64,000 nt of DNA, from the NCBI GenBank assembly GCA_002269645.1, contig NIVC01000494.1, positions 372,001-436,000 on the forward strand, in the 5' to 3' direction. The position numbers and the translations under genes are program-made. This document shows positions 40,557-64,000 of this stretch, one piece after another. Position 1 is the stretch's first letter. Every line of letters begins with the position of its first letter. Under the pieces are notes generated by a model. That model had not been told where the DNA came from. It did not search any database and saw only the letters and a list, made by a program, of their open reading frames with translations. This DNA comes from Macrostomum lignano. Lineage: Eukaryota.

Positions 40557-42730
40557 CTAGGCATTTCGCGAGGCGGCAGCTGCAGCCGCTTTGCTGCCAA
40601 TAACGCTGCTCAGCTCCTCCTGTACTCGCCTCTGCGCCTCTCTGGTGTTCTTCGGCACGGAGGTGCGCATCGTCTCTACAATGCCGTTTAGGCCGTCAAA
40701 GTACACCTGGATCATCTGCTGGCGCATGGAGGTCTCGGTTTCCTAGAAAGAGAAACAACAAATCAAATTAGGGCGACGGTAAAGTGTATTTTTATTTTTT
40801 ATAAATTAAAAACGAAACTGGGTGAACAACTAGCATGTGAAGTATAAAATATCTATATCAATATAAAATACCTTTATCTCTCAATCTAGAATACCAAATC
40901 TCTAAATCTAGAATGATCCGATTACCCAATCTAGAATACCCCAATCTCTAAATCTAGAATGATCCGATTACCCAATCTAGAATACCCCAATCTCTAAATC
41001 TAGAATGATCCGATTACCCAATCTAGAATAGCCTAATCTCCTAACCAAGAATACCCCAGCATTTCAATCTAGAATACCCCAGCATTTCAAACTAGAATAC
41101 CCAATCTCCTAACCAAGAATACCCCAGCATTTCAATCTAGAATACCCCAATCTCCTAACCAAGAATACGCCAGCATTTCAACCTAGAATACCAATCCCAG
41201 ACTCACCTCAATCATTCGGCCAATAGTGAAGATATGAGCCTGCATATCGGCCACAGTGGCCTCCTTCTCCACCTGGCGGGTGAGGCTGCCGCCAATGTCG
41301 AACTCGCCAGCGGCTGTGTCGGCAGTCCGCACCCACAGCATGGTGGTGGCGGTCAGCTTGTATTTGGCACTGCGGCCGCCAATTTTGTGAGCCACCTCCA
41401 CAACATGAATAGAATCCCATTGGCCGCGTGTTCTAGCCGCGTCGCCGATCTTTTTAATTAGCACCACTCCGGCGAAGCCGTTGTCCATGTCCCACAGGTA
41501 GGCAGAGGAGATGCCGCCGCCAAAGTACAAATCCTGGTATTGCTCCATCGCCGAATTCAAATCGATTTCAAGCGAACGGAGTCGATCTGATGGCACTGTG
41601 CCGTCCTCTAGCGGCGGGTCGTATCTGGGAGATATGGTTGATATATGCATTGATCGTGTATGCGAACACTGATAGTGCCCTGCCAAGGCATTTCGGTATC
41701 CCAACTTGCTCTTTGGAGATTTTGGTGGCAAGTAGTATCGAGTGTTTCTTATTGTATTCTTTTCAAAGGGGGATTCCTATGAAGAGTTTTTCAATGCGAT
41801 ACTTAAACACTTAAGCCTTGTGGGCCTTTTTCTTTATGAAGACGCAATTTTTTGATGCAGTGTTTGCTAGCAAAATTTTTTGACAATGTAAATTTTAGAG
41901 CTTGTGAAGCTTTGAACTTGTGAAGATTCGAGATTTTTTGACAATTCGAACTTGTGAAGTTTCGAGATTGTGAAGATTCGAGCTTGTGAAGTTTCGAGAT
42001 TGTGAAGTTTTGAGGTTGTGAAGTTTTGAGTTTTTTTTTTTTTGAGATTGTGAAGTTTTGAGATTGTGAAGTTTTGAGATTGTGAAGATTTGAGATTGTG
42101 AAGACTAGAGATTGTGAAGATTCGAGATTGTGAAGTTTTGAGATTGTGAAGATTTGAGATTGTGAAGACTAGAGATTGTGAAGATTCGAGATTGTGAAGT
42201 TTTGAGGTCGTGAAGTTTTGAGATTGTGAAGATTAGAGATTGTGAAGATTCGAGATTGTGAAGATTCCAACTTGTGAAATTTCAAAATTGTGAAGAATCG
42301 AGCTTGTGAAGAATCGAGCTTGTGGAGAGTCGAGCTTGTGAAGAATCGAGCTTGCGAAAAATCGAGCTTGTGGAGAGTCGAGTTTGTGAAGAACCGAGCT
42401 TGTGAACAATCGAGCTTGGGAAAGATTCGTGTCTGACTTGTATGCATCCGTGATTCCGTGTGCACAGATTTTCAGTTAGCTAAAGTCTCACTTGTTACTC
42501 CAAGGTGACCTGTAGCTGTCGGCATCCCGATTATAATCGCATAGCAAATAGTCTTTGTTGCAGGACGAATCTCTGGCCACTTTGAGCGGCTGATCAACAG
42601 AGCAGAGCAAATTCTCTGTCAGGTCCGGCACCAGGTCGATCAGGTGAGCCAGATTGGCTTCGACCTCCTGTGGCGGCAGGCGGCGCATCATGTCCAGCGC
42701 GCAGTTTAGTCGGCGATCTCCGGCGTCCAT
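40557..42730 (-). CDS. CAPZB: F-actin capping protein subunit beta (divergent), 3 exons, 280 aa
   Basis: Exons 42730-42492, 41624-41207 and 40742-40557, GT-AG and phase-consistent. Motifs: [92 protein letters not shown]. Confidence 0.95.
40880..41195. repeat. Compound tandem repeat in CAPZB intron 2
   Basis: Units built on tctagaataccc(c)aatct and agaataccccagcatttca. Confidence 0.85.
41880..42420. repeat. 15-16-bp minisatellite in CAPZB intron 1
   Basis: Unit gag(a/c)ttgtgaag(ttt/att/aatc). Confidence 0.9.
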
Positions 42731-43033
42731 TGTGCTGCTTGCTTGCCAGATGGCTTAGCTAATTAGCTAGCATGAAATTTTAATTAGCTCGCTTGATAAG
42801 AAACTAATGATAGTGAATAAATGTGATATTTAATTTAATTGGTTTGTCACTAATTGACACTCAAACAAACTGGCAAACAACTCCAATTCATTAAGCAGAT
42901 AAGCCTACATTTCATATCAAAGTAAACATACCTTTTGTTTCAGGTAAGTTGCATTTTGATCAAAAAGTAAGTTGTACAGCTGGGTGAAATTTCGAAGTTG
43001 GGCATGTATAGTATGTGTATAGACCATACATGT

Positions 43034-43193
43034 GCAACCTTGGGAATCACCTAGCCATTTCTATTGGCAACACACACACACGCACGTAAGTTGCTATTGG
43101 CTAAGAGCAGTCACGTGACTACTATTCTGTCCAATAGCAACTTAGATGCGTGTTGCCATTAGAGAAATGGCCAGGTAAATCCCTAGGTAGTGC
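43034..43193. mobile_element. About 160-bp palindromic (hairpin) element, copy 1
   Basis: Arms gcaaccttgggaatcacctagccatttcta-ttggcaac...taagttgctattgg and ccaatagcaactta...gttgcca...agaaatggccaggtaaatccctaggt around a central agtcacgtgact. Confidence 0.65.
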
Positions 43194-45569
43194 CCCAATA
43201 TGGTATAGACTAAGCCTAGAAAAATAGGTAAAACTAGAAACCAATGAGAGGGGGTAGATTAGGGCACAATATCTAGAATAACTAGATAGGCCACTCAGCA
43301 CATTTGTATTTATATATAAACTACTTTTACTTTAGTAGTAAATTAGACAAGCATTTTAATGCATTTTTAAAGCCAATGCTTGTTTATTGGCTCTTATTCC
43401 TAGCCTACACCCCACCCACACACCAAAATATTAAACATGTATACCCAAAGCCCAAAATCACTTTTTACTATAGATTAGGTCACAATAAAGATAATTTGCT
43501 TATTGATATACTATGTAGACACTTTGTTAAGCCTATAGGGGGATTATAAATCTGAAAGGCATTATAGATAAAAAGGTAATTAGAAGTTAGTTTCAGTCTA
43601 TACTTACCATTATATATGTTGGCATTTTGGTTCTTTGCATCTATCATATTTAAGAATTTAAGTTTTGAGGTCTTTTTCCCTTGGCCTTAGCCTTTTTCTC
43701 TTTTTGTATTTTTGTATTTCCTGAGTTTTGCCAATCCTAGGATTCATGGAAGTGGGATATCCTAGACTTTGCTAATTCTAGGATCCCAACAAATTAGAAA
43801 AAAATTGATAAGGTTTCTAATTTTTTGGTGTAATTTTAGTTTATGAAGCCATTCAATAATTATTTCAAAGGGCTTTCAATGATAAAAGTTTAACAGAATA
43901 AAATATTCTGCAAATAAGAAACTGACGGTGAGCTCTGAATTGGAGTGTGATAGATAGGCTGGCATATTAGATGTGTTTTTTACATGCCAGTATCAGCTCA
44001 GGGAAGACCCCACTTGATTGTCATATAACCTGGGGAACAATAGCTTACAGAGCTATGGCCTAAGGTATTAATACCAGGTTAGAAGGGGATCAGACCTCAC
44101 CTTCCCAGGGGCACCCGCCTTAGAGAATTGGTAGCTTTGGTTGTGGTCCAATAGCAAGGTCCTAACTCCCACTGTTCTAATCCCAACTATAGCCAAGGAG
44201 TTTTGAAGGTAGGGACTGTTAAAAATAGTTCTACCACCAACCCTATTCTAGGTATCTAAAAGGGTGCCTTGACAATGCTAAGAATGAGGTCTTTTGCATA
44301 GGGGGCTTCTGATCTGCACAAGGTTGAGACTTGAGACCCCCGACTTTAGCTAGGTTTGAGATAGAGGGAGAGTTCAAATGAACAATGATTTGACTCCTAT
44401 CTAGTAAGCTATAGCAATGACAGCTTCAGTTTTGTATATCATGCAGCCCTAGGCTTCTCACTAGCTTGCATGCTTAAAAGATTATTAATCAAAGCAAGAC
44501 AAATAGTTAATAATTTCAACTGACAAATAGCTCAGCTGCAGATACTACTTGAGAATGAATGATTAAATTATTGCAAAACAGGATTGAGATCTTGATGGTC
44601 AATTTCAGGATTCTCAAATCCTAGAAAATTGTGATCTTGGGATTTAGAATCCCAGGATTTGGGTCTAAGCCAAGGATTTTGGGATCCTAAGATCCTAGGA
44701 TTGTATTCCCTAGTAGCATTTCTAGTTCTCTTTCTCTATATTAACCAGGGCTTTTATATATCTAATATATAGATGAAATATATTTAAAATAGCAATATCC
44801 TAGTTTTGACACTAGATTTTAAATAAACTAACTAAAACAAATTTATTAATGTGTATTTAAGGTCTTAAGGTCAAAAAAGAATTACCCAACATAATAATAG
44901 ATGGCTTCTAGTTAATTCATCTATTGAAAACTGCCAAGTAAACAAAATGCCTTTTTCTTTTAAGACTATTTATCTATTAGGAAATAAGGATAGGGAAAAG
45001 AGTGGGATAGGAAAGAGAATAGGATAAGGAGCCCCTTAACAATGTCTTTGTTAATATTGTTGAAAATACTATGGGTTGCATCATTTTAACAAACTATTTC
45101 ATAATAGTATATATAATATCTATAGAAAGAATAACAAACTTGACTTTTAGAAACTTTAATAAAATGAAAACTATTGAAAATTTTCTAAAGATTAAAAATA
45201 TCAATAGATTGTCTTTCTTATTCAACAATTTTCAGATGTAAAACATATGTCATTTCAAATCTAAAGTTATCGCATACTGTGTCTCCCCCTTTTTAAATTC
45301 TTATCTTTATTTTCTAATAGAAAGAGAAAACTTTGTCTGCTCAGCAGATAAAATAACTGGTATTTTACTAAGGTAAAATTTATCCCAAAAACAAAAAATG
45401 TAGTTTACATAAAAAGTAAAAATATTAAATGTGTGTATATAGAACTTTATTAAAATACAAAATAAATAAGGTATGGCTATGAGAGCTTTAGTAAATTAAT
45501 ATTGGTGCAAATATTACCATTGCTATATTTAATTAATAATGTCTCTGCAACTATGGCTATTATACATGT

Positions 45570-45717
45570 GTAACCTTCAGAATCACTTGGCCGCTTCTAT
45601 TGGCAACCCACACATATATGTTGCTATTGGCTAAGAGTAGTCACGTGACTACTATTCTATCCAATAGCAACTTACATATGTGTTGCCAATAGAAATGGCC
45701 AGGTGAATCCCTAGGTT
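45570..45717. mobile_element. Palindromic element, copy 2
   Basis: Same arms and same orientation as 43034-43193. Centre gtagtcacgtgactac is a perfect 16-bp palindrome. Confidence 0.65.
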
Positions 45718-46492
45718 GGGCCCAAGCATGATGGCTATGCTTTTTAGGCAAAAAATTGACTGTTTTATATACTTTCTATATTGTTTGGATTGTTGGATTG
45801 TTTGGATCAACAAAATATAGACAGTGATTGACAAACATGTGGTCATGTTAGGAAGCCACTGGTTGGGAAGTGCAAGTTATAGGCTTATGCCTACTAGCTA
45901 TTGCCTGTTAGTTATAAAGTCCTAGCAACACATATTGGCTATTGCTAGGCCTAAATAATTGGCAGCACTGACTTAGCAGACCTTAGCTTAAGTATGCTTT
46001 TAATAAACTTGTTTTCATTCATTTGTAAAAAATTTTATGTCAAAATAGGCCTAATTTTATGTGTAGAACTAGAGGCCTAGGTAGGGGCCTAGGGAATAGG
46101 ACATTTAAAATTGAAAATTGAGAAAAATTTCCATTTTCTAAGATTGAAACAATTCTCAAAAGAGTACCTATGACTATATCCCTAAGCTAATGAACTCAAA
46201 ATTTAAGGCATTAAGCAATACATCCCCTTCCCATGTTGGCTTTTTTTGCACAAGTGAGAAAAATGGTACATGACCAAGATACCTACATACCAAGATGGCC
46301 ACAGCTTTATATGTCTAAATCAAGAATGATAAGCCTATGTTTATATATTTTAATTATTTCTTATTAATAGTAATTTGAATTAGATGTAGATCTTTAAGTC
46401 TTAAAGAGATAGATGGTATAATGGAATGGAATTATATTACATTATAATCATCCCATTTGGCTTCAGCTTTTATTATATTATACCCTAGCCTT

Positions 46493-50032: not shown

Positions 50033-51867
<1,835 letters not shown>

Positions 51868-53129: not shown

Positions 53130-54252
53130 TTCTGTGTGTCAGTGCCGCTAAACTGTGTGTCATTGCTGCTAAACTGTGTGTCAGTGCCGCTAAACTGTGT
53201 GTCAGTGCCGCTAAACTGTGTCAGTGCTGCTAAACTGTGTGTCAGTGCTGCTAAACTGTGTGTCAGTGCCGCTAAACTGTGTGTCAGTGCCGCTAAACTG
53301 TGTCAGTGCTGCTAAACTGTGTGTCAGTGCCGCTAAACTGTGTCAGTGCCGCTAAACTGTGTGTCAGTGCCGCTAAACTGTGTCAGTGCCGCTAAACTGT
53401 GTCAGTGCTGCTAAACTGTGTGTCAGTGCTGCTAAACTGTGTGTCAGTGCCGCTAAACTGTGTGTCAGTGCCGCTAAACTGTGTCAGTGCTGCTAAACTG
53501 TGTGTCAGTGCTGCTAAACTGTGTGTCAGTGCCGCTAAACTGTGTCAGTGCTGCTAAACTGTGTGTCAGTGCTGCTAAACTGTGTGTCAGTGCCGCTAAA
53601 CTGTGTCAGTGCCGCTAAACTGTGTGTCAGTGCCGCTAAACTGTGTCAGTGCCGCTAAACTGTGTCAGTGCCGCTAAACTGTGTGTCAGTGCTGCTAAAC
53701 TGTGTGTCAGTGCTGCTAAACTGTGTGTCAGTGCCGCTAAACTGTGTGTCAGTGCCGCTAAACTGTGTCAGTGCTGCTAAACTGTGTGTCAGTGCTGCTA
53801 AACTGTGTGTCAGTGCCGCTAAACTGTGTCAGTGCCGCTAAACTGTGTGTCAGTGCCGCTAAACTGTGTCAGTGCCGCTAAACTGTGTCAGTGCCGCTAA
53901 ACTGTGTGTCAGTGCCGCTAAACTGTGTGTCAGTGCCGCTAAACTGTGTGTCAGTGCCGCTAAACTGTGTGTCAGTGCCACTAAACTGTGTCAGTGCCGC
54001 TAAACTGTGTCAGTGCCGCTAAACTGTGTCAGTGCCGCTAAACTGTCTCAGTGCCGCTAAACTGTCTCAGTGCCGCTAAACTGTGTGTCAGTGCCGCTAA
54101 ACTGTGTGTCAGTGCCGCTAAACTGTGTGTCAGTGCCGCTAAACTGTGTGTCAGTGCCACTAAACTGTGTCAGTGCCGCTAAACTGTGTCAGTGCCGCTA
54201 AACTGTGTCAGTGCCGCTAAACTGTGTGTCAGTGCCGCTAAACTGTGTGTCA
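53130..54252. repeat. 19/21-bp minisatellite
   Basis: Unit (tg)tgtgtcagtgc(c/t)gctaaac. Confidence 0.97.
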
Positions 54253-55242
54253 GTTCCAAATTATATTTCTTCAAACAATCGGCAGTATTCTTAATCCAGT
54301 TATTCCTAAACCGACATTGTCTCGGCAGGTAAAGTCCTCTCGAGAAAATAGCCGAAGAATTATTTAGTAAAACAACGTACGGCCGGTATATGTAAGGATC
54401 GACCAGTATTCAACCTTGATTGTTACTTCCTTGTTAACCATACATCATACCGGCTGATGCAATGCCTATTTTTGGAGTGTCCGAATAGCTGGGGAGCTAA
54501 ACCACGGAAATGCCACGGCCTTGCCGCGGAAGAACATTCAAGCAAACATCTAATCTTCTGTCCAGCAAGTGGCAACTCCGCGGGAAATCACAGGGCTGGC
54601 CGTGTGATGGCCTTCTATAGCCAGTTATGTTTCATTACGAGCTAAGTATTCAAATATTTTGAATTCTCCTGCAAGTGCGAGCTATATTTTTCTAAAACAG
54701 TGTATTCTTCATTGGTGTCCTAATTCGCGGTTTTTGGTAAGTAGATTATCTTAATACCTTTGTTGTACTGTATCCTTGCTTAGGGCCAGTCTAATTTAGT
54801 ACCGGATTATTAACCTTAATTCACTTCAACCGTAAAATTTCACACAGTTACTGCCATTTGAGCTTTATGTACGAACAATAATAATTCAGACCAAACCCGT
54901 AAAGTATATGGGCGTATTTATTCGATTTTTCTAGATAAAATACTCAAACTTCATTCACGTTTTTCTACTGTATGTCAGCTGTCGAGGAAATCCCCACTTA
55001 AGTGTGCACTGGGCTTTGTACATCATGCTATCCATCCCATTTCTCCCGCGGTAATTCCGTGGCTTTGCCGGATCGGCCGACCGCGGCTAATCTGTGGGAA
55101 TTCCCCGGGAAAAATGGCTTGAATAAATCGGCTCTTAAAATAGAATGGTGGCATGACTCACCCTCCGATCTCATCTTTCAGTTTCCGACCTCACTCATCC
55201 TACAATCTCACCTTCAGCTCAATTTAACCTGCTCCGATCAAC

Positions 55243-58011
55243 ATGCGATTCGGAAGTTGTCTACTGACGCTGTTCCTGATAATACATACATTTCTCCGAG
55301 GGTAAGCTCATGAGCATTGACTACTGATTAATTTGAGTAGTAAGTAACATATACGCATCGTAATTTACTATTCGAAAATTTCATTCTATCACACAGAACC
55401 TCTCCTGGTACGCAATTCTGCCTGCCAAACAGAGCTATCACTATCAGCATGAAAATGGACGCACTTCATCAAGACAGCGTCACTCTAGTTGCTAGGCCAG
55501 ATACTTCATCGCCCGCTGCACTTTATAAGTCGTCGAATTTCAACTGCAGATGGAATTTACTAGCGAAACCCTGTTCCCAGAGCAGTGAGCGGCAGTTGAT
55601 GCTGATTGGTGATCCATCGAGTAAGGTCGGCATTACGAATGAGATGCGATACTGGCTGAGTGGTTCCGAGTTCCCTGTGTACCCTGGCCTGATTCACGGA
55701 GTCACTCTAGGTGCCAAGTGAGTACTGAACTATATATGAACTTATTAATAATATTAATACTAACCACCTTGATTTGATTCTTGACCTTTGAGCTCTATAG
55801 ATTCTCAATAAATCGCACGAACTGTAATTGGAGGGGTCGCAACCCTAGGAAGCGCCAATGCTTGGTGTCTTGGTGGGCATCCCTGTCTCTTGTTAGGCAC
55901 CCCTGTCTCTTGTTAGGCACCCCTGTCTCTTGTTAGGCACCCCTGTCTCTTGTTAGGCACCCCTGTCTCTTGTTAGGCACCCCTGTCTCTTGTTAGGCAC
56001 CCCTGTCTCTTGTTAGGCACCCCTGTCTCTTGTTAGGCACCCCTGTCTCTTGTTAGGCACCCCTGTCTCTTGTTAGGCACCCCTATCTCTTGGTGGGCAC
56101 CCCTGTCTGTTGTTAGGCACCCCTGTCTCTTGTTAGGCACCCCTGTCTCTTGTTAGGCACCCCTGTCTCTTGTTAGGCACCCCTGTCTCTTGTTAGGCAC
56201 CCCTGTCTCTTGTTAGGCACCCCTGTCTCTTGTTAGGCACCCCTGTCTCTTGTTAGGCACCCCTGTCTCTTGTTAGGCACCCCTGTCTCTTGGTGGGCGC
56301 CCCTGTCTCTTGTTAGGCACCCCTGTCTCTTGGTAGGCGCCACTGTCTCTTGGTAGGCGCCACTGTCTCTTGGTAGGCGCCACTGTCTCTTGGTAGGCGC
56401 CACTGTCTCTTGGTAGGCGCCACTGTCTCTTGGTAGGCGCCACTGTCTCTTGGTAGGCGCCACTGTCTCTTGGTAGGCGCCACTGTCTCTTGGTGGGCGC
56501 CACTGTCTCTTGGTGGGCGCCACTGTCTCTTGGTGGGCGCCACTGTCTCATAGTAGGCGCCACTGTCTCTTGGTGGGCGCCACTGTCTCTTGGTGGGTGC
56601 CACTGTCTCTTGGTAGGCGCCACTGTCTCTTGGTGGGCGCCACTGTCTCTTGGTGGGCGCCACTGTCTCTTGGTGGGCGCCACTGTCTCTTGGTGGGCGC
56701 CACTGTCTCTTGGTAGGCGCCACTGTCTCTTGGTGGGCGCCACTGTCTCTTGGTGGGCGCCACTGTCTCTTGGTGGGCGCCACTGTCTCTTGGTGGGCGC
56801 CACTGTCTCTTGGTGGGCGCCACTGTCTCTTGGTGGGCGCCACTGTCTCTTGGTGGGCGCCCCACGAGCAATTTATTTGAACGTCAATCGCGCAAATCCT
56901 CATGTATTACAACCTGTACCGTTTCTCCCACCCCCTGCAGCAGCTGCATCATCAAGGTGTCGGCCTCCATGAGCTCCCAGCATCCTGCCGCCTCGGAGCC
57001 GCCCAGTCTCACAGCGGTGCTGCTTCATCCCGAGATCTGTGCCAGGGACTTTCTCCAGTTCAAAGGCGGCTGCTACACAGCCAGTCGAATCCGTCAGAGC
57101 TTCAAGGACTTCTCGAGCAGCATCCTGGGCTCTGCTCAGCTGGCCAGCTTCTCCTGCAAGGCTGAGATCAGCAGCTTCATCGTTGCAAGTGAGTCCAGAA
57201 AATGAGATTGAGGATGCATAAGAGGAATTCAAGTAACAGCATTAACTAAATTCACTTGAGACATGAATTAAGTGAAATAAACTTACTTGCTAATTTCCCA
57301 GACCTGCACCGAGCGCGGGCTTATCCGTACAGGCCGCCTCTGGACCTGACACAGCCGACTCGAATCGCCGTGTTTTACAGACCCTCCGATCACAGCGTGC
57401 TTTCGCCTGCTTGGAATGGGACTCACTGCTGGCTGCAGACGGTTGCTGAGCTGCAGAGCCTGGCAGACCATCTGTGAGTATCTGGGATTCCATCTTTTAA
57501 TACGTGTTTGTGTGTCTTCTACCTGAGTGTTTTGCGTTTCTGAACTACCAGCCGACGCAGGCCGCCAGACCCTCGCACAGCCAAAGCGGCCGTCCTGCTC
57601 TGCGCACACCTCACCACACCTACGGAGAAGTCGTTAGCATCAAATTGGTCAGTCGTCTTCGCTGACTGCGGCACTCCGATGCTGTCGCTGGTGGCCACCC
57701 GTCAGGCCCCGCAGTGCAACCTCAGCGATGCCATGCTGAAGGCTTTCAACAACGTCGAGACAGAAGCGCCGCTCGGAGGTGTGCAGAATGAGACAGAACT
57801 GGGCTCGACTTCTGGATCGGGAAGCTCAGGAGGGACTGCCGTCCTTGTCCCTGCTTTCTTGATTGCAATTTTATTCTTAATCGTTTTCTTAATCTTTCGG
57901 CAAAGGTGTGCGTCGGTTTGCGAGCATTCTGAGTCAGGTGCTGACTCAGGTGCTCAGCACAATCAGTTATCCAAGTTCCAGCTGCTCGAATTGAAGCTAC
58001 GGCAAGTTTGA
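55243..58011 (+). CDS. Receptor-like gene A: signal peptide, CUB-like domain, atypical C-type lectin-like domain, TM, short tail (about 419 aa)
   Basis: Phase-consistent GT-AG exons 55243-55301, 55397-55717, 56941-57188, 57302-57473 and 57552-58011. N-terminus MRFGSCLLTLFLIIHTFLRG. Exon 2 has FC...NFNCRWNLLAKP. Exon 3 has ICARDFLQFKGGCY...LASFSCKAEI. Last exon has LLCAHL..NWSVVFADC, then TM AVLVPAFLIAILFLIVFLIF-RQR. An extra intron after the TM (ag|gtgtgc) is possible. The gene structure is well supported; the domain names are inferred. Confidence 0.75.
55870..56862. repeat. 20-bp minisatellite in gene A intron 2
   Basis: c(c/a)ctgtctcttg(t/g)t(a/g)ggc(a/g)c, about 50 copies in three variant blocks. 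Confidence 0.97.
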
Positions 58012-58809
58012 GACTATAATTTTGTATAAATTTGCTCATCCAGTTTAGAGTGAAGTTGGCACTGCAGCTGAAATGAATTGCGAAATAACGAAGAGCAGAG
58101 GGCTCTGAAAGCTGAGTCACCATTACTGCAGCTTTAAAATGTGCTACTCAACCGAAAATTTTGTCCCAGAAATTTCCTATCCAGAACTCAAGAGACCAAA
58201 GATCCCTTAAGAGAACAGGACCTGCCCAAATCGCCATGTGCTGAGTAGAAAGTGAAGTTCATTCTCTGTTTAGGTGTGCTCCCCATGATAAATTTGAACA
58301 GGAAATCTCAGATAAAGTTTCGAATTTACGACGCAAAAGTATTACAGCAGAAGATAAAGTGTTTTTCCGAATATCTCAGGAAGATAGAGGCCATATAGTA
58401 ACTTCTAGAAAAATACATCACAGGCATGACGCAATTGCCAGAATGCAACTGCCCAGAGGCTTCATATTGGTACTTCCTCACTGCAGCTTGTTTTTGCATT
58501 AACTAATTTCGCTTGAATTAATCTCATAAAATATAATACTCGGCACCCTCTCTGTATATGCTTAATAATAGTTATAATAATGCTAATAGTAACAATAATA
58601 ATAGTAAAATATAAATAATCTACTAACGCTTAATGCATTCTTCGTATGTTATTGACTTTGTTTGCAGATATATATATTTAAATAGCTAATGGTATGAGGC
58701 ATGATGGGTAGGTATGTAAAAGTGGCGCGAGTCACAGTCAGGCCCAGACAGCGAGCTCTTGTCCTCTGTCAAGCCGCCACAGTCTGCTGATAAGGAAAAC
58801 ATGAGAGAC

Positions 58810-59150
58810 GGTCCGATACAGACTCTCAAGGTGTGGGACAGTCCGATACAGACTCACAAGGTGTGGGACAGTCCGATACAGACTGGACAGTCCGATACAG
58901 ACTCACAAGGTGTGGGACAGTCTGATACAGACTCTCAAAGGGTGGGACAGTCCGATACAGACTCTCAAAGGGTGGGACAGTCCGATACAGACTCTCAAAG
59001 GGTGGGACAGTCCGATACAGACTCACAAGGTGTGGGACAGTCCGATACAGGCTCACAAGGTGTGGGACAGTCCGATACAGACTCACAAGGTGTGGGACAG
59101 TCCGATACAGACTCTCAAGGTGTGGGCAGTCCGATACAGACTCACACGTG
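58810..59150. repeat. 30-bp minisatellite
   Basis: Unit gtccgatacagactcacaaggtgtgggaca. Confidence 0.95.
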
Positions 59151-59215
59151 GTGATTCATAGCTCATATACGACTCAATATTGTCCTACATGGGCCCGTGA
59201 GAAAACACACTGCAT

Positions 59216-59540
59216 GCGGGGGGTTTCACTAGGCCGAAATTTCACTTTGCCGAAAGCATCTTCCTTCACAAGGCCGAAACTTCATAAGGCCGAAACTTCA
59301 CTTTGCCGAAAAATCATTTTAGCATCGTCTTTCATTAGGCCGAAACTTCACTTTGCCGAAATGACTAACACGCTCTTTCTTCAGGCCGAAACTTCACTAG
59401 GCCGAAAAATCATTTTGCAGCCTCTTTCACTAGGCCGAAACTAATTTAATTAACTTGATTACGTCTACATGTACGATCCAGATCCAGACCGGCAGCCGAT
59501 TTCACAGTAGCGTAAATGTAAAACTGTAAATTTGCATTAT

Positions 59541-59607
<67 letters not shown>

Positions 59608-60004
59608 ACTATCTATCTTACGAAAATTAGATTTCTCGGTAGTTGCACGTACTCTTTTGCACTACTTGAGTAGTCTGATTTTCGTTCGGCATGGCTGGTT
59701 CCAGCAGGTAGTTCCTCTGGATAAAAGCGCTTACCGCGCCCATTGGCTTTCCAGCTGCCTTAATCGTTTCCGGTGATCTTGTGTGCGTGCTTTCAGCGTG
59801 ATTGGCTGCGGCAAGAGAGCTCGAAAGAGCTCGCTTCGCTCGCTCTTTCTCGCTATCTACTATCTATCTATCTAACTATCTATCTGTCTTTTTTGGAGGC
59901 TTAAGTTCACATCCCCTTTCGACCATAGTAAGGATGCTGCTAAAATGATTTTTCGGCAAAGTGAAGTTTCGGCCTAGTGAATTTTCGGCCTAGTGAAAGC
60001 GCCC
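59216..60004. mobile_element. Foldback/MULE-like non-autonomous element (about 790 bp)
   Basis: Left arm: tandem tttcactaggccgaaa/ttcactttgccgaaa (59216-59445). The right arm is the inverted array (59945-60004). Flanked by a direct repeat CACTGCAT at 59208-59215 and 60005-60012. Internal (TATC)n tracts. Confidence 0.75.
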
Positions 60005-60654
60005 CACTGCATATAAGTCTTTCTCTCTTTCTCTTTGACGATGTCTCAGATACCTAATGTCCCTAATCAGTTAAAAAAGTAAAAGGTCCGATAGCTTTCT
60101 CTCGATCTTTAGTCCTCAACACGGATGTTTTATTTCTTCCACTTTCTTACTCGTTACAGTTTCAAATAGATGCTCAGCACGTAATTGTATTAAGCAATTT
60201 AGTGAGAAGGAATAGAGCTTTAAAAGCACGTGACCTTTGAGGGATGGTCACTGGACACCCTGCCCTCTGTGGGCGTGTTTGAGTGCGTTTGAGCTGGATT
60301 TGAGAGTTTCATTCCAATACTTTTCGGGACTTCCAGTTCCTGATTGGCTCTCTTTTTGGCTCCTGGTTGAAGACGGATTTTCCATCGTTTCTCCATAGGC
60401 ATGAAATACATGTAGGTTTAAAAAAGCTATCTGTCTGCATGGTCTGTTTGGCAATAATTATCGCCTCGCAACTGCTTGGATACATGCGCATGCTAATGAG
60501 TGATGTTCATGGTAAGTTGCTTGGGAATTCAGATCTATTTTACACTTAGCATAAAAATGATAACTTTGAATTAAATGAGCAGGATAAACCGCTTGGCAGC
60601 TGATGGTTGTAAGCTCACATTTATATAAACAATGTTTTTTCGACTCATATCTAT

Positions 60655-61517
60655 AGCCATATCTACATCTATTCCCTCTGTGCCATATCTACATCCATTC
60701 CCTCTGTGCCATATCTACATCCATTCCCTCTGTGCCATATCTACATCCATTCCCTCTGTGCCATATCTACATCCATTCCCTCTGTGCCATATCTACATCC
60801 ATTCCCTCTGTGCCATATCTACATCCATTCCCTCTGTGCCATATCTACATCTATTCCCTCTGTGCCATATCTACATCCATTCCCTCTGTGCCATATCTAC
60901 ATCCATTCCCTCTGTGCCATATCTACATCCATTCCCTCTGTGCCATATCTACATCCATTCCCTCTGTGCCATATCTACATCCATTCCCTCTGTGCCATAT
61001 CTACATCCATTCCCTCTGTGCCATATCTACATCCATTCCCTCTGTGCCATATCTACATCCATTCCCTCTGTGCCATATCTACATCCATTCCCTCTGTGCC
61101 ATATCTACATCCATTCCCTCTGTGCCATATCTACATCCATTCCCTCTGTGCCATATCTACATCCATTCCCTCTGTGCCATATCTACATCCATTCCCTCTG
61201 TGCCATATCTACATCCATTCCCTCTGTGCCATATCTACATCCATTCCCTCTGTGCCATATCTACATCCATTCCCTCTGTGCCATATCTACATCCATTCCC
61301 TCTGTGCCATATCTACATCCATTCCCTCTGTGCCATATCTACATCCATTCCCTCTGTGCCATATCTACATCCATTCCCTCTGTGTCATATCTACATCCAT
61401 TCCCTCTGTGCCATATCTACATCCATTCCCTCTGTGCCATATCTACATCCATTCCCTCTGTGCCATATCTACATCCATTCCCTCTGTGCCATATCTACAT
61501 CCATTCCCTCTGTGCCA
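60655..61517. repeat. 26-bp highly homogeneous minisatellite
   Basis: Unit gccatatctacatccattccctctgt, about 33 nearly identical copies. Confidence 0.97.
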
Positions 61518-62691
61518 AAACTCTCTCGTCTCTTACATGTTTCACATCAGCTTTTTGCTGCCAATATAATATATGATTCGCTACTAGAGTCCTTGCTATT
61601 GGTTCCTAGTGGTCCTTGCGCGTGCCACTAGTGCCTTAAACTTGTACTGTACCCTGAATACAAACTTTACTCAATAGCAGCACGTCGGTGCAGCATGACG
61701 GTGAATTAGTCATAGTTAAATCCGTTAGCTAAGTCGTCATGGCCTGATATTGGTTACTGGTTTTCGACGGAATTTCCATGGTTTCTCCAATGAGCTTGTA
61801 ATAAATAAAAAAACTTTTATCAAGACTGTCTGTTTAGTCTATTTGGGAATAAGCGTCGCCTCCCAACCCAACTGTTTGGATACATGTACGCATGCTAATG
61901 ATGTGTTACCAGTGATGTTGGTCAAGTTGTTTCCGTTAGCCAAGTCGTCATGGCCCGAAATACCCGTGCCATTCTCATCGCTATTATTGGAACCTATTCA
62001 GTGTACACTTGCTGGAATTGCCGCTCCGCCACGGGGAATTCCGCGGTTAGCCCTCGGTCATGCCGCGATGATATACTGTAATTCTGGGGATAAATCCAAG
62101 GGCATTTCGCAGATAATTCCAAGGGCATCCCAAGGAATTGCCTTGTAATTGCCACCGAATTTTTCTTAAACTGTGCTTTGACAAAATCTGCTTTGAGAGA
62201 GTCGTCTTAATTAGCCTATCTGTCCATGCAAAAATTGGTAAGTTTCAATTTAAACATCCCCTTTTTGTTAAATTTTGTGTTTAACATGCAGAATACCGTA
62301 ACTCTAACTAGCTTTATCAGATAATTGTTACAGGTGCTAATACTTGTTCCAGCTTAGTGCTTCTCAAATAGATTTAAAAATTAAACTACTAAAATAGTTG
62401 TTTTAATTACCTTGCCGCCCAAGCCTTTGCTAAATTGTAGCACTATTTTTAGTTCCATGTTGCTTCTGTACACTTGTAGGAGTACACTGTCAAATGTAAT
62501 GTAGATATCATACTGTACATTGACTAAGGGTATTACCGCCAACTGACGAAAAGTACATTTTATATGAAAATAAATTTTACTGCAAAGGACTTATCCGTTC
62601 GTTTTTTAATTGTTGGTTAACAAAAAATCATAGCTGGAAAAAAACGAATCGATACTTCAGATTTCAACACTTCTTAAAACCTTTTTTCCAG

Positions 62692-64000
62692 ATGGCAACC
62701 AGAATTAAAATGTGCGAGCGTTTTGGCGAAATCCTTATTATTATCTTTTGCGTTGCAAGCATTCTAAGGTGAGTCTGTTGCTGAAATGTCAAAGTAGGAT
62801 TTGCGGTCAGTTACAATGATTTAAGAAGACTTACACTAAATTACGTATTTCAGTGCCTATGCTGGCAGTCATTATTGCTACAACTCTCGAACGGACGAAA
62901 TTGACATTGCCAAACGCCATCAAAAGGACGAGACACTGACTGCGGAACTGGAACCATCCAGTACTGCTAGAGTGTCGCCCCGGACACCTGCAAACTGTCA
63001 ATGGGAGATTTCCTGCTTTGGACTGAGGCAAAATGCGCCAATGCAGATGGCACTGATTGCAGGCAGGTACAACAGCAACATCGCGATGCACTATCAGATG
63101 GGTGAACATCAGTACGACGTTTCTAACGGTCTGATGCATGGAATCACCCTGTTTGATGAGTGAGTACTGACGCTTGGAGTCTTGGGTTATCATGGTGTGA
63201 GACCAGCTAGCATCTAATTAGCACTCTGAGACATTGTGAGACCAGCTAGCATCTAATTAGCACTCTGAGACAGTGTGAGACCAGCTAGCATCTAATTAGC
63301 ACTCTGAGACAGTGTGAGACCAGCTAGCATCTAATTAGCACTCTGAGACAGTGTGAGACCAGCTAGCATCTAATTAGCACTCTGAGACAGTGTGAGACCA
63401 GCTAGCATCTAATTAGCACTCTGAGACAGTGTGAGACCAGCTAGCATCTAATTAGCACTCTGAGACAGTGTGAGACCAGCTAGCATCTAATTAGCACTCT
63501 GAGACAGTGTGAGACCAGCTAGCATCTAATTAGCACTCTGAGACAGTGTGAGACCAGCTAGCATCTAATTAGCACTCTGAGGCAGTGTGAGACCAGCTAG
63601 CATCTAATTAGCACTCTGAGACAGTGTGAGACCAGCTAGCATCTAATTAGCACTCTGAGACAGTGTGAGACCAGCTTATACATTGTTGTTTTTGTATGCT
63701 ACGAGCGTATTTACAAAAATTTATATATTAAAACAAATATATATTAAAACAAAAATTTTTATATTACTCACTCGAACCGACCCAATCAACCTGCAGCAGC
63801 TGCATCATCAAGGTGTCGGCCTCCATGAGCTCCAAGCATCCTCCGGAGCCGCCCAGTCTAAGAGTGGTGCTGCTTCAATCCAATATCTGTGCCAGGGACT
63901 TTCTCTATTTTCAAGGCGGCTGCTACACAGCCAGTGGAATCCGTCAGAGCTTCAAGGACTTCTCCAGCAGCATCCTGGGCTCTGCTCAGCTGGCCAGCTT
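62692..64000 (+). CDS. Receptor-like gene B, paralog of gene A, 3' part beyond the window
   Basis: Exons 62692-62768 (MATRIKMCERFGEILIIIFCVASIL, signal-like), 62854-63159 (YC...ANCQWEI...GLMHGITL) and 63797 to beyond 64000 (about 93% identical to gene A exon 3). Intron phases are the same as in gene A. Confidence 0.8.
63195..63675. repeat. 39-bp minisatellite in gene B intron 2
   Basis: Unit accagctagcatctaattagcactctgagacagtgtgag, about 12 copies. Confidence 0.97.

What the first reader, a model, noticed from the sequence alone, without database searches (positions are those of the whole stretch)
55243..64000. Mosaic tandem receptor paralogs: highly diverged exon 2 next to a near-identical exon 3
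Seen: genes A and B share exon order and intron phases. The signal exons show no obvious similarity. Exon 2 proteins are only about 25% identical by eye (shared G..[FY]C, HQ, TL, NC.W, LI, M.Y, GL.HG.TL). Exon 3 differs by only 15 substitutions and one 6-bp indel over 204 nt, with similarity starting at the acceptor (cctgcag|cagctgc). Both intron-2 donors read gtgagtactga. Inference: an old duplication with recent gene conversion or exon shuffling of the membrane-proximal part, leaving a variable distal domain on a homogenised module. This architecture is expected of diversified immune, allorecognition or gamete-recognition receptor families.
Basis: partly seen in the sequence, partly recalled or inferred. 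Interest (0 to 1): 0.8.

Follow-up and report, generated by a model that had tools for sequence, protein, structure and literature searches.

The report
Mosaic tandem flatworm surface-protein genes
Two neighbouring genes of the flatworm Macrostomum lignano, from a family found only in that species, combine a very old, very different second exon with a third exon that shares a recent ancestor; this is a familiar kind of partial gene homogenisation, and nothing ties it to immunity or mating.

Summary
Gene A (55243-58011, 5 exons, 419 aa) has a signal peptide, a roughly 325-aa ectodomain, a transmembrane helix and a short tail. Gene B (62226-64000+) is cut by the window end. Both share exon order and intron phases.

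- **Exon 2:** 27% amino-acid identity, with synonymous sites saturated (dS about 2.3).
- **Exon 3:** exactly 15 substitutions plus one 6-bp indel over 204 nt (dS 0.07, dN 0.08).
- **Start of similarity:** 7 nt before the acceptor.

The window is Macrostomum lignano, because two UniProt models are encoded exactly by it. A third paralog elsewhere (A0A1I8GGG7) shows the same mosaic: 27-31% identity in exon 2 and 79-86% in exon 3. The pattern is therefore family-wide.

The best explanation is recent homogenisation of the 3' part, by ectopic gene conversion or unequal crossing-over, bounded in the minisatellite-filled intron 2. Reshuffling of exon cassettes cannot be excluded.

The N-terminal domain is a CUB-like beta-sandwich. 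Its last strands appear to be encoded by the conserved exon 3, so the boundary follows the exon structure and not the protein domains. The following region looks like a C-type lectin domain, but this is unproven.

This is a new member of a known kind, of modest interest.

The parts
55243..55301 (+). Gene A exon 1 (signal peptide, ends in phase 2)
   Evidence: ATG, hydrophobic core, GT donor
55397..55717 (+). Gene A exon 2: the variable, CUB-like beta-sandwich part (107 codons)
   Evidence: An alternative acceptor at 55581 is used in UniProt model A0A1I8IMD7
55718..56940 (+). Gene A intron 2, holding a 20-mer minisatellite at 55868-56861. The donor is gtgagtactga
56941..57188 (+). Gene A exon 3 (conserved): last sandwich strand(s), Pro-rich linker and the start of the CTLD-like region
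57302..57473 (+). Gene A exon 4
   Evidence: open frame, GT-AG, GC 0.61 against 0.34-0.41 in the flanking introns
57552..58011 (+). Gene A exon 5: end of the ectodomain, Ser/Gly stalk, transmembrane helix, 37-aa tail, stop codon
62226..62237 (+). Gene B 5' mini-exon (MQKL) in the annotated model
   Evidence: the spliced translation equals P0121 over 199 aa
62692..62768 (+). Gene B exon 1 (signal peptide, ends in phase 2)
62854..63159 (+). Gene B exon 2: the variable, CUB-like part (102 codons)
63160..63796 (+). Gene B intron 2, holding a 39-mer minisatellite at 63195-63676. The donor is gtgagtactga
63797..64000 (+). Gene B exon 3 (conserved), cut by the window end. The annotated protein continues for 13 more residues (FSSKAEISSFIEA) to the end of exon 3
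56934..57150 (+). High-identity tract in A, paired with 63790-64000 in B: 92.5% nucleotide identity plus a 6-bp indel
   Evidence: D7, D8

Best explanation
A and B are adjacent members of a Macrostomum lignano-restricted family of signal-peptide-bearing surface or secreted glycoproteins. Each has an N-terminal CUB-like beta-sandwich followed by a probably CTLD-like region. Gene A also has a stalk, a transmembrane helix and a short tail. The exon 1-2 cassettes of the family members are ancient lineages. Exon 3, and perhaps the rest of the 3' part, has been homogenised among paralogs fairly recently by ectopic gene conversion or unequal crossing-over between the tandem copies. The 5' limit of the exchanged tract lies in the unstable, minisatellite-filled intron 2. 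Shown: the step in synonymous divergence, the family-wide mosaic at protein level, and a boundary that follows exon structure and not domain structure. Inferred: the conversion mechanism itself, the extent of the tract, and any function.
For: 1) Exon 2 has dS 2.26 and exon 3 has dS 0.068. In exon 3, 12 substitutions are nonsynonymous and 3 are synonymous, so dN/dS is about 1.2. Exon 3 similarity therefore reflects recent shared ancestry and not amino-acid constraint.
2) A locus-against-locus blastn finds only exon 3, plus a weak 43-nt match at the end of exon 2 and the donor. Promoters, intron 1 and the exon-1 signal sequences are unrelated.
3) The third paralog P0122 (A0A1I8GGG7, encoded outside the window) shows 27-31% identity in exon 2 and 79-86% in exon 3 against A and B. 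Several loci therefore share the homogenised exon 3.
4) The AlphaFold2 model of B (pLDDT 65.6; 73-82 over residues about 80-140) places the strands 'CIIKVSAS' and 'SLRVVL', which exon 3 encodes, after nine exon-2 strands. Foldseek alignments to CUB and jelly-roll domains span about 130 columns, more than exon 2 encodes. The break in similarity therefore follows the exon structure and not the domain structure, as expected of a DNA-level exchange with an intronic end point.
5) GC3 rises from 0.52 (exon 2, both genes) to 0.72-0.78 (exon 3). This fits GC-biased conversion but does not prove it.
6) Differences within exon 3 are clustered: 13 of 15 lie in nt 38-122 (scan p=0.004), and the last 82 nt are 97.6% identical. 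This pattern is typical of patchy conversion or of a variable linker.
7) In M. lignano, indels remove non-coding similarity very quickly. Homeologs differ by about 2% in SNPs but by about 36% when indel length is counted (PMC10733133). Loss of intron similarity at about 7% divergence is therefore expected.
Against: Only two DNA sequences of exon 3 are available, and there is no outgroup, so conversion is not shown directly. The 3' end of intron 2 shows no significant similarity (p=0.64), although a genomic conversion tract would usually spill into it. Introns 3-4 of A are AT-rich (GC 0.34-0.41), which argues against long-term GC-biased conversion across the whole 3' region. The exon 3 sites give ((B,C),A), and exon 2 does not contradict that, so no discordance has been demonstrated. 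It is unknown whether B has exons 4-5.
Confidence: 0.55

Rival explanations
1. Cassette reshuffling or duplication, not conversion. In one form, a recent duplication of the 3' module (exon 3 onward) was placed behind pre-existing, anciently diverged exon 1-2 cassettes. An example is an ancestral gene with several alternative 5' cassettes and one constant region that later resolved into separate genes. In the other form, whole-gene duplicates had their 5' cassette swapped by recombination in the repeat-rich intron 2.
For: The same data as for conversion: the step in dS, a boundary at or in intron 2, and a break that follows exons and not domains. Each cassette carries its own signal-peptide exon and its own upstream region. 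Intron 2 in both genes carries a different long minisatellite, which is a plausible recombination substrate.
Against: It needs a source of old cassettes, and that source is simply older family members whose own exon 3 has vanished. This is hard to tell apart from conversion. In this window each cassette already has its own exon 3, so it is not a shared-constant-exon cluster.
Confidence: 0.25
2. An old duplication throughout, with exon 3 kept similar by unusually strong constraint at the nucleotide level. The constraint could come from codon bias, an embedded RNA or splicing element, or an overlapping antisense function.
For: Exon 3 has high GC3 (0.72-0.78). An antisense ORF (56900-57232) overlaps it. 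The stretches encoding SCIIKVSASMSS and GGCYTAS..LAS are almost invariant in three paralogs.
Against: In exon 3, 12 of the 15 substitutions change the protein, and dN/dS is about 1.2, which is the opposite of strong constraint. Third-position identity is 91% against 38% in exon 2 of the same transcript. No Rfam family matches. Antisense ORFs are common in GC-rich exons.
Confidence: 0.05
3. An assembly artefact. The M. lignano assemblies are partly chimeric and redundant, and a join inside a minisatellite could have attached a foreign exon 3 to B's exon 2, or placed homeologous or allelic material in tandem.
For: 36% of the Mlig_3_7 assembly length lies in chimeric scaffolds, and copy number is often misrepresented (PMC10733133; PMC5730564). 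Both exon 2-exon 3 links cross arrays of 0.5-1 kb.
Against: The two exon 3 copies differ at 15 sites plus an indel, so they are not a collapsed or duplicated copy. That is also 6-7 times the homeolog coding divergence of 1.1%. The flanks, introns and exons 1-2 of A and B do not align at all, so they are not haplotypes or homeologs. The public model P0121 joins B's exons 0-1-2-3, and an independent paralog, P0122, shows the same exon 2-exon 3 join.
Confidence: 0.07

Closest known systems
Partial concerted evolution of tandem or clustered paralogs by ectopic gene conversion. Examples are the clustered protocadherin variable exons, MHC class I genes and the red/green opsin genes (reviews PMC3966226 and PMC3924837; PMC1852091)
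   Same: Neighbouring paralogs in which one segment is kept nearly identical while another keeps old divergence, with a sharp step in synonymous divergence inside the gene.
   Different: In the opsin case the introns are homogenised and an exon resists conversion. Here the exon is similar and the adjoining intron is not. The family is a lineage-restricted orphan. Conversion is inferred from two DNA copies and one further protein, without orthologs.
[quoted passage not shown]
   Same: Diverse 5' cassettes, each with its own promoter and signal sequence, joined to a common 3' part.
   Different: Tested and not met. Each cassette here is followed by its own copy of exon 3 (A at 56941, B at 63797), and A's constant exons lie upstream of B's cassette.
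[quoted passage not shown]
   Same: A signal peptide plus a CUB-type sandwich combined with a CTLD-type domain, in expanded lineage-specific families.
   Different: Neither domain here reaches Pfam thresholds. The order is CUB-like then CTLD-like, with one of each. Gene A has a transmembrane anchor, whereas those CLECs are secreted. There is no evidence of pathogen-responsive expression.

Membership tests
CUB domain (Pfam PF00431) | Match to the family profile at or above the curated threshold | tested here: not met
   No CUB hit at E<=10 for A, B, P0121, P0122, P0123 or the isolated domain. A profile of four family members against PDB sequences gives no CUB hit.
CUB domain (Pfam PF00431) | Beta-sandwich (jelly-roll) fold of about 110 aa and about 10 strands | tested here: inconclusive
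   The AlphaFold2 model of B has 11 strands and pLDDT 65.6. Foldseek hits to CUB domains (BAI3, Neto2, enteropeptidase, PCPE-1, C1r CUB2, Gpr126, Kremen, spermadhesin) have E from 3e-4 to 8e-3, but target-normalised TM-scores are only 0.09-0.47 across them. The top hits are the C. perfringens enterotoxin C-terminal sandwich. UniProt names the paralog A0A1I8IMT6 'CUB domain-containing protein'; this is a source's automatic name.
CUB domain (Pfam PF00431) | Four conserved cysteines forming two disulfides | tested here: inconclusive
   Cys28, Cys70 (in the NC.W motif) and Cys129 (in exon 3) are conserved. A fourth Cys (79 in A) is not in register in B and C. Pairing was not testable.
C-type lectin-like domain (Pfam PF00059) | Match to the family profile at or above the curated threshold | tested here: not met
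   No Lectin_C hit at E<=10.
C-type lectin-like domain (Pfam PF00059) | N-terminal C..[WF]..F.G.CY.[FA]S motif followed by alpha1 and alpha2 | tested here: inconclusive
   In the exon 3 profile search against PDB, five of six sub-threshold hits are CTLDs (DC-SIGN family, KLRF1; E 0.4-0.8). They align exactly at the start of the CRD. The AlphaFold2 model of B shows a beta hairpin followed by helices at 167-211.
C-type lectin-like domain (Pfam PF00059) | WIGL-type core motif, the C-terminal disulfide pairs, and the complete fold | not testable with these tools
The resemblance of 'LLCAH...NW...ADCGT' to the CTLD C-terminal half rests on memory only.
Interlocus gene conversion / concerted evolution | Paralog divergence at synonymous sites far lower in the tract than in the flanking coding sequence | tested here: met
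   dS 0.068 against 2.26.
Interlocus gene conversion / concerted evolution | Paralogs within a species group together for the tract, while orthologs group together outside it | not testable with these tools
   No other Macrostomum genome or transcriptome DNA could be reached.
Interlocus gene conversion / concerted evolution | More than two family members share the homogenised segment | tested here: met
   A, B and P0122 are 79-86% identical in exon 3 and 27-31% in exon 2. This is protein level only for P0122.
Variable-first-exon cluster (PCDH/UGT1 type) | Several variable exons share a single downstream set of constant exons | tested here: not met
   A and B each have their own exon 3.
Diversified immune, allorecognition or gamete-recognition receptors | High allelic polymorphism or positive selection in the distal domain, with expression in immune or reproductive tissue | not tested
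   No population or expression data were reachable. Exon 2 dN/dS cannot be interpreted because dS is saturated. No signalling motif was recognised by eye in the 37-aa tail (sequence).

The most novel reading that the evidence does not exclude
The family could be a flatworm 'variable cassette plus constant module' recognition system. The long minisatellite that sits in intron 2 of every member, exactly between the variable and constant parts, would act as a recombination substrate. It would repeatedly reassort ancient CUB-like cassettes onto a homogenised module, in the germline or even somatically, somewhat like switch-region recombination.
Probability: 0.04. Interest if true: 0.8.

Novelty: new member of a known kind. 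Interest (0 to 1): 0.3.

Why it matters
This gives a clean, measured example of partial homogenisation in a neopolyploid, repeat-rich flatworm genome. The break follows the exon structure and cuts through a protein domain. It also shows that the public M. lignano models for this locus are fragments, one of them misnamed 'Alpha/beta hydrolase'. They hide a complete 419-aa type I membrane protein belonging to a species-restricted family. If the family proves large and polymorphic, it would be a candidate recognition family in a model organism for regeneration and sexual conflict. Nothing yet points that way.

Tried and rejected
1. The full-length A protein against the 5.8-billion-protein set found nothing. 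A trimmed query found the family.
2. Pfam found nothing for any member or sub-domain. A single-sequence search of PDB gave only non-significant LRFN5 hits.
3. A metagenome scan for relatives found none.
4. Look-ups of encoding contigs for window ORFs and for P0121, P0122 and P0123 found nothing on record. The window could therefore not be extended rightwards, and no DNA of other paralogs was obtained.
6. AlphaFold2 on exon 2 alone gave pLDDT 48 and meaningless Foldseek matches.
7. Rfam and tRNA scans of the window were empty.
8. GOLPH3 was used to identify the organism but gave only 'bilaterian'. The organism was settled later by exact matches to UniProt M. lignano models.
9. Rejected: A and B as haplotypes or homeologs, because the flanks do not align and divergence is 6-7 times the homeolog level. 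Rejected: a shared-constant-exon cluster. Rejected: protein-level constraint as the cause of exon 3 similarity.
10. A hint of similarity at the 5' end of intron 2 is noted but too weak to move the boundary. It consists of the identical 11-nt donor plus a 13-of-14 match 'GCTTGGWGTCTTGG' (p about 0.004).
Full report
**What is there**

Reading 54000-64000 and splicing the candidate exons gives gene A as five GT-AG exons: 55243-55301, 55397-55717, 56941-57188, 57302-57473 and 57552-58011. Together they form one open 419-aa frame.

- The protein has an N-terminal hydrophobic signal sequence and an ectodomain of about 325 aa with ten cysteines and four N-glycosylation sequons.
- It continues with a Ser/Gly stalk, one strong hydrophobic helix (19-residue windows with mean hydropathy above 1.6 start at residues 356-373), and a 37-aa tail.
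- Exon GC is 0.56-0.61, against 0.34-0.41 in introns 3 and 4, which supports the exon calls.

Gene B is 62692-62768, 62854-63159 and 63797-64000, running off the window. The public model P0121 adds a 12-nt 5' mini-exon at 62226-62237. It matches my splice exactly over the 199 aa encoded in the window, then continues for 13 residues (FSSKAEISSFIEA) to the end of exon 3. Introns 1 and 2 are phase 2 in both genes.

**Checking the observation**

- Exon 3 of A and B differ by exactly 15 substitutions and one 6-bp indel over 204 nt.
- The identical run begins at 'cctgcag', 7 nt before the acceptor.
- Both intron-2 donors read gtgagtactga.
- Exon 2 proteins are 27-28% identical, with the listed motifs, and are truly homologous (tblastn E=2e-7).

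Nei-Gojobori estimates make the contrast quantitative:

| Segment | dS | dN | Third-position identity |
|---|---|---|---|
| Exon 2 | 2.26 (saturated) | 0.82 | 38% |
| Exon 3 | 0.068 | 0.082 | 91% |

In exon 3, 12 differences are nonsynonymous and 3 are synonymous. The similarity of exon 3 is therefore not amino-acid constraint on an old duplicate; it reflects recent common ancestry.

A sensitive blastn of the A locus against the B locus finds only exon 3, plus a 43-nt, 74% match at the end of exon 2 and the donor. The 5' flanks, intron 1 and the 3' end of intron 2 show no convincing similarity.

**Organism and family**

The neighbouring genes are GOLPH3 (50048-51867) and a CapZ-beta-like ORF (41183-41731, named by eye). 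They only place the window in a bilaterian.

A first search with the whole A protein found nothing. This was an artefact of low-complexity words filling the candidate cap. Searching with only the constant ectodomain found two proteins:

- P0121, which is gene B itself.
- P0122, which is UniProt A0A1I8GGG7 from Macrostomum lignano.

An exhaustive profile search with exon 2 against 1.84 billion representatives found only three proteins:

- P0121.
- P0123 (A0A1I8IMT6, 'CUB domain-containing protein', M. lignano), which is 80% identical to A's exon 2.
- P0124 (A0A1I8IMD7).

P0124 is encoded exactly by the window: 55218-55301 is joined to an internal acceptor at 55581 and stops in the intron-2 donor. 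The window is therefore M. lignano, and in the searched collections the family is confined to this species. P0122 and P0123 are not encoded in the window.

This identification explains the context. Simple and tandem repeats make up about 15% of that genome (PMC5730564), and about 37% of this window. Homeologs differ by about 2% in SNPs (1.1% in coding sequence), but by about 36% when indel length is counted (PMC10733133).

**The mosaic is family-wide**

Identities from the alignment of A, A' (P0123), B and C (P0122) are as follows:

| Pair | Exon 2 identity | Exon 3 identity |
|---|---|---|
| A-B | 28% | 85% |
| A-C | 27% | 79% |
| B-C | 31% | 86% |
| A-A' | 80% | not available |

By eye on that alignment, B and C share the 2-residue deletion and seven substitutions in exon 3, which gives ((B,C),A). 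Exon 2 distances are saturated and star-like, so tree discordance can be neither shown nor excluded.

**Protein anatomy**

Pfam gives nothing. AlphaFold2 on exon 2 alone failed (pLDDT 48).

Folding the annotated B protein with the small family alignment gave pLDDT 65.6, and 73-82 over residues about 80-140. The model shows:

- eleven beta strands, the last two being 'CIIKVSAS' and 'SLRVVL', both encoded by exon 3;
- then a hairpin and helices.

Foldseek hits were beta-sandwiches. The top hits were the C. perfringens enterotoxin C-terminal domain. Many CUB domains followed (BAI3, Neto2, enteropeptidase, PCPE-1, C1r CUB2, Gpr126, Kremen, spermadhesin) at E from 3e-4 to 8e-3, with alignments of about 130 columns. 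That is longer than the 102 residues exon 2 encodes.

The N-terminal domain is therefore a CUB-like sandwich that appears to be completed by strands from the conserved exon 3.

An exon 3 profile against PDB sequences gave only sub-threshold hits. Five of six were C-type lectin domains (DC-SIGN family, KLRF1; E 0.4-0.8), aligned at the CRD start on the motif C..[FW]..F.G.CY..S. The CTLD assignment remains a lead.

**Mechanism**

The step in synonymous divergence, its recurrence in a third paralog, and a break that follows the exon map and not the domain map all point to a DNA-level exchange ending in or at intron 2. I favour ectopic gene conversion or unequal crossing-over between tandem members, homogenising exon 3 and possibly exons 4-5 (confidence 0.55). 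Supporting observations:

- GC3 is higher in exon 3 (0.72-0.78 against 0.52).
- Differences within exon 3 are patchy: 13 of 15 lie in nt 38-122 (scan p=0.004), and the last 82 nt are 97.6% identical.

Both observations fit, but neither is decisive.

Indels and array growth erase intron similarity far faster than substitutions accumulate. At about 7% divergence, which is 6-7 times the homeolog coding divergence, the intron would be expected to be unrecognisable.

The 5' end of intron 2 gives a weak hint. The 11-nt donor is identical, and a 13-of-14 match follows it immediately in B and after a 130-nt insertion in A (p about 0.004). The exchanged tract may therefore once have covered the whole intron.

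**Rival explanations**

- **Cassette reshuffling or duplication of the 3' module behind old 5' cassettes (0.25).** It cannot be separated from conversion with the data at hand.
- **Nucleotide-level constraint on exon 3 (0.05).** dN/dS of about 1.2 contradicts it.
- **Assembly chimerism (0.07).** The 15 differences between the copies, the non-alignable flanks, the annotated B model joining exons 0-3, and the independent paralog with the same join all make it unlikely.

A protocadherin or UGT1-type shared-constant-exon cluster was tested and not met, because each cassette has its own exon 3.

**Function and comparison with known systems**

No evidence supports an immune, allorecognition or gamete-recognition role. 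No expression or polymorphism data could be reached, I recognised no signalling motif in the tail, and exon 2 dN/dS cannot be interpreted.

The nearest known phenomenon is partial concerted evolution of clustered paralogs (PMC3966226, PMC3924837, PMC1852091). Unlike the opsin case, the exon here is homogenised and the intron is not. [quoted passage not shown]

**Verdict**

- This is a new member of a known kind, and interest is modest (0.3).
- The most novel reading is minisatellite-mediated reassortment of variable cassettes as a recognition system. It is not excluded, but I put it at about 4%.

Noticed in passing
window 1-64000: About 37% of the window (23.6 kb) is minisatellite or microsatellite arrays with units of 4-60 nt. 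Several lie inside introns: GOLPH3 at 50593-51307, gene A at 55868-56861 and gene B at 63195-63676. This fits the repeat-rich M. lignano genome.
   Followed up: partly
window 59211-60011: A foldback element between genes A and B. Its arms are built of GGCCGAAACTTCAC-type subrepeats (81 nt, 85% complementary), with (TATC)n tracts inside.
   Followed up: partly
window 43026-43202 and 45562-45730: Two direct copies (85-88% identical) of a roughly 175-nt internally palindromic element that looks like a MITE.
   Followed up: partly
window 55218-55720: UniProt A0A1I8IMD7 ('Alpha/beta hydrolase') is a fragment model of gene A. It reads the 5'UTR and exon 1 in the wrong frame, joins to an internal acceptor at 55581, and stops at the TGA in the intron-2 donor. 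The name is clearly wrong. It does hint that an alternative acceptor is used in transcripts.
   Followed up: yes
window 41183-42730 (-) and 50048-51867 (+): Conserved neighbours: an ORF that looks like F-actin capping protein beta (named by eye, not tested) and GOLPH3. The first 163 aa of GOLPH3 match human GOLPH3 in PDB at E=4e-55. Its intron holds a 31-mer array that stays open in frame, producing a spurious 426-aa ORF.
   Followed up: partly
window 60290-60530, 61714-61961: Related blocks of about 170 nt appear (by eye) to flank the 26-mer array at 60656-61517. A 37-nt direct repeat lies at 61714-61750 and 61925-61961 (84% identical), upstream of gene B. This is possibly a dispersed repeat.
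   Followed up: no
window 62668-62700: Gene B's main ATG sits directly after a strong acceptor (ttttttccag|ATGGCAACC). M. lignano trans-splices many mRNAs (PMC5730564), so this could be a spliced-leader acceptor as well as the cis-acceptor used in the annotated model.
   Followed up: no
(tool behaviour): The word-indexed protein search missed identical and 80-85% identical database entries when the query contained the transmembrane and Ser/Gly segments. The candidate list was at its 8000 cap. Trimming the query recovered them.
   Followed up: yes
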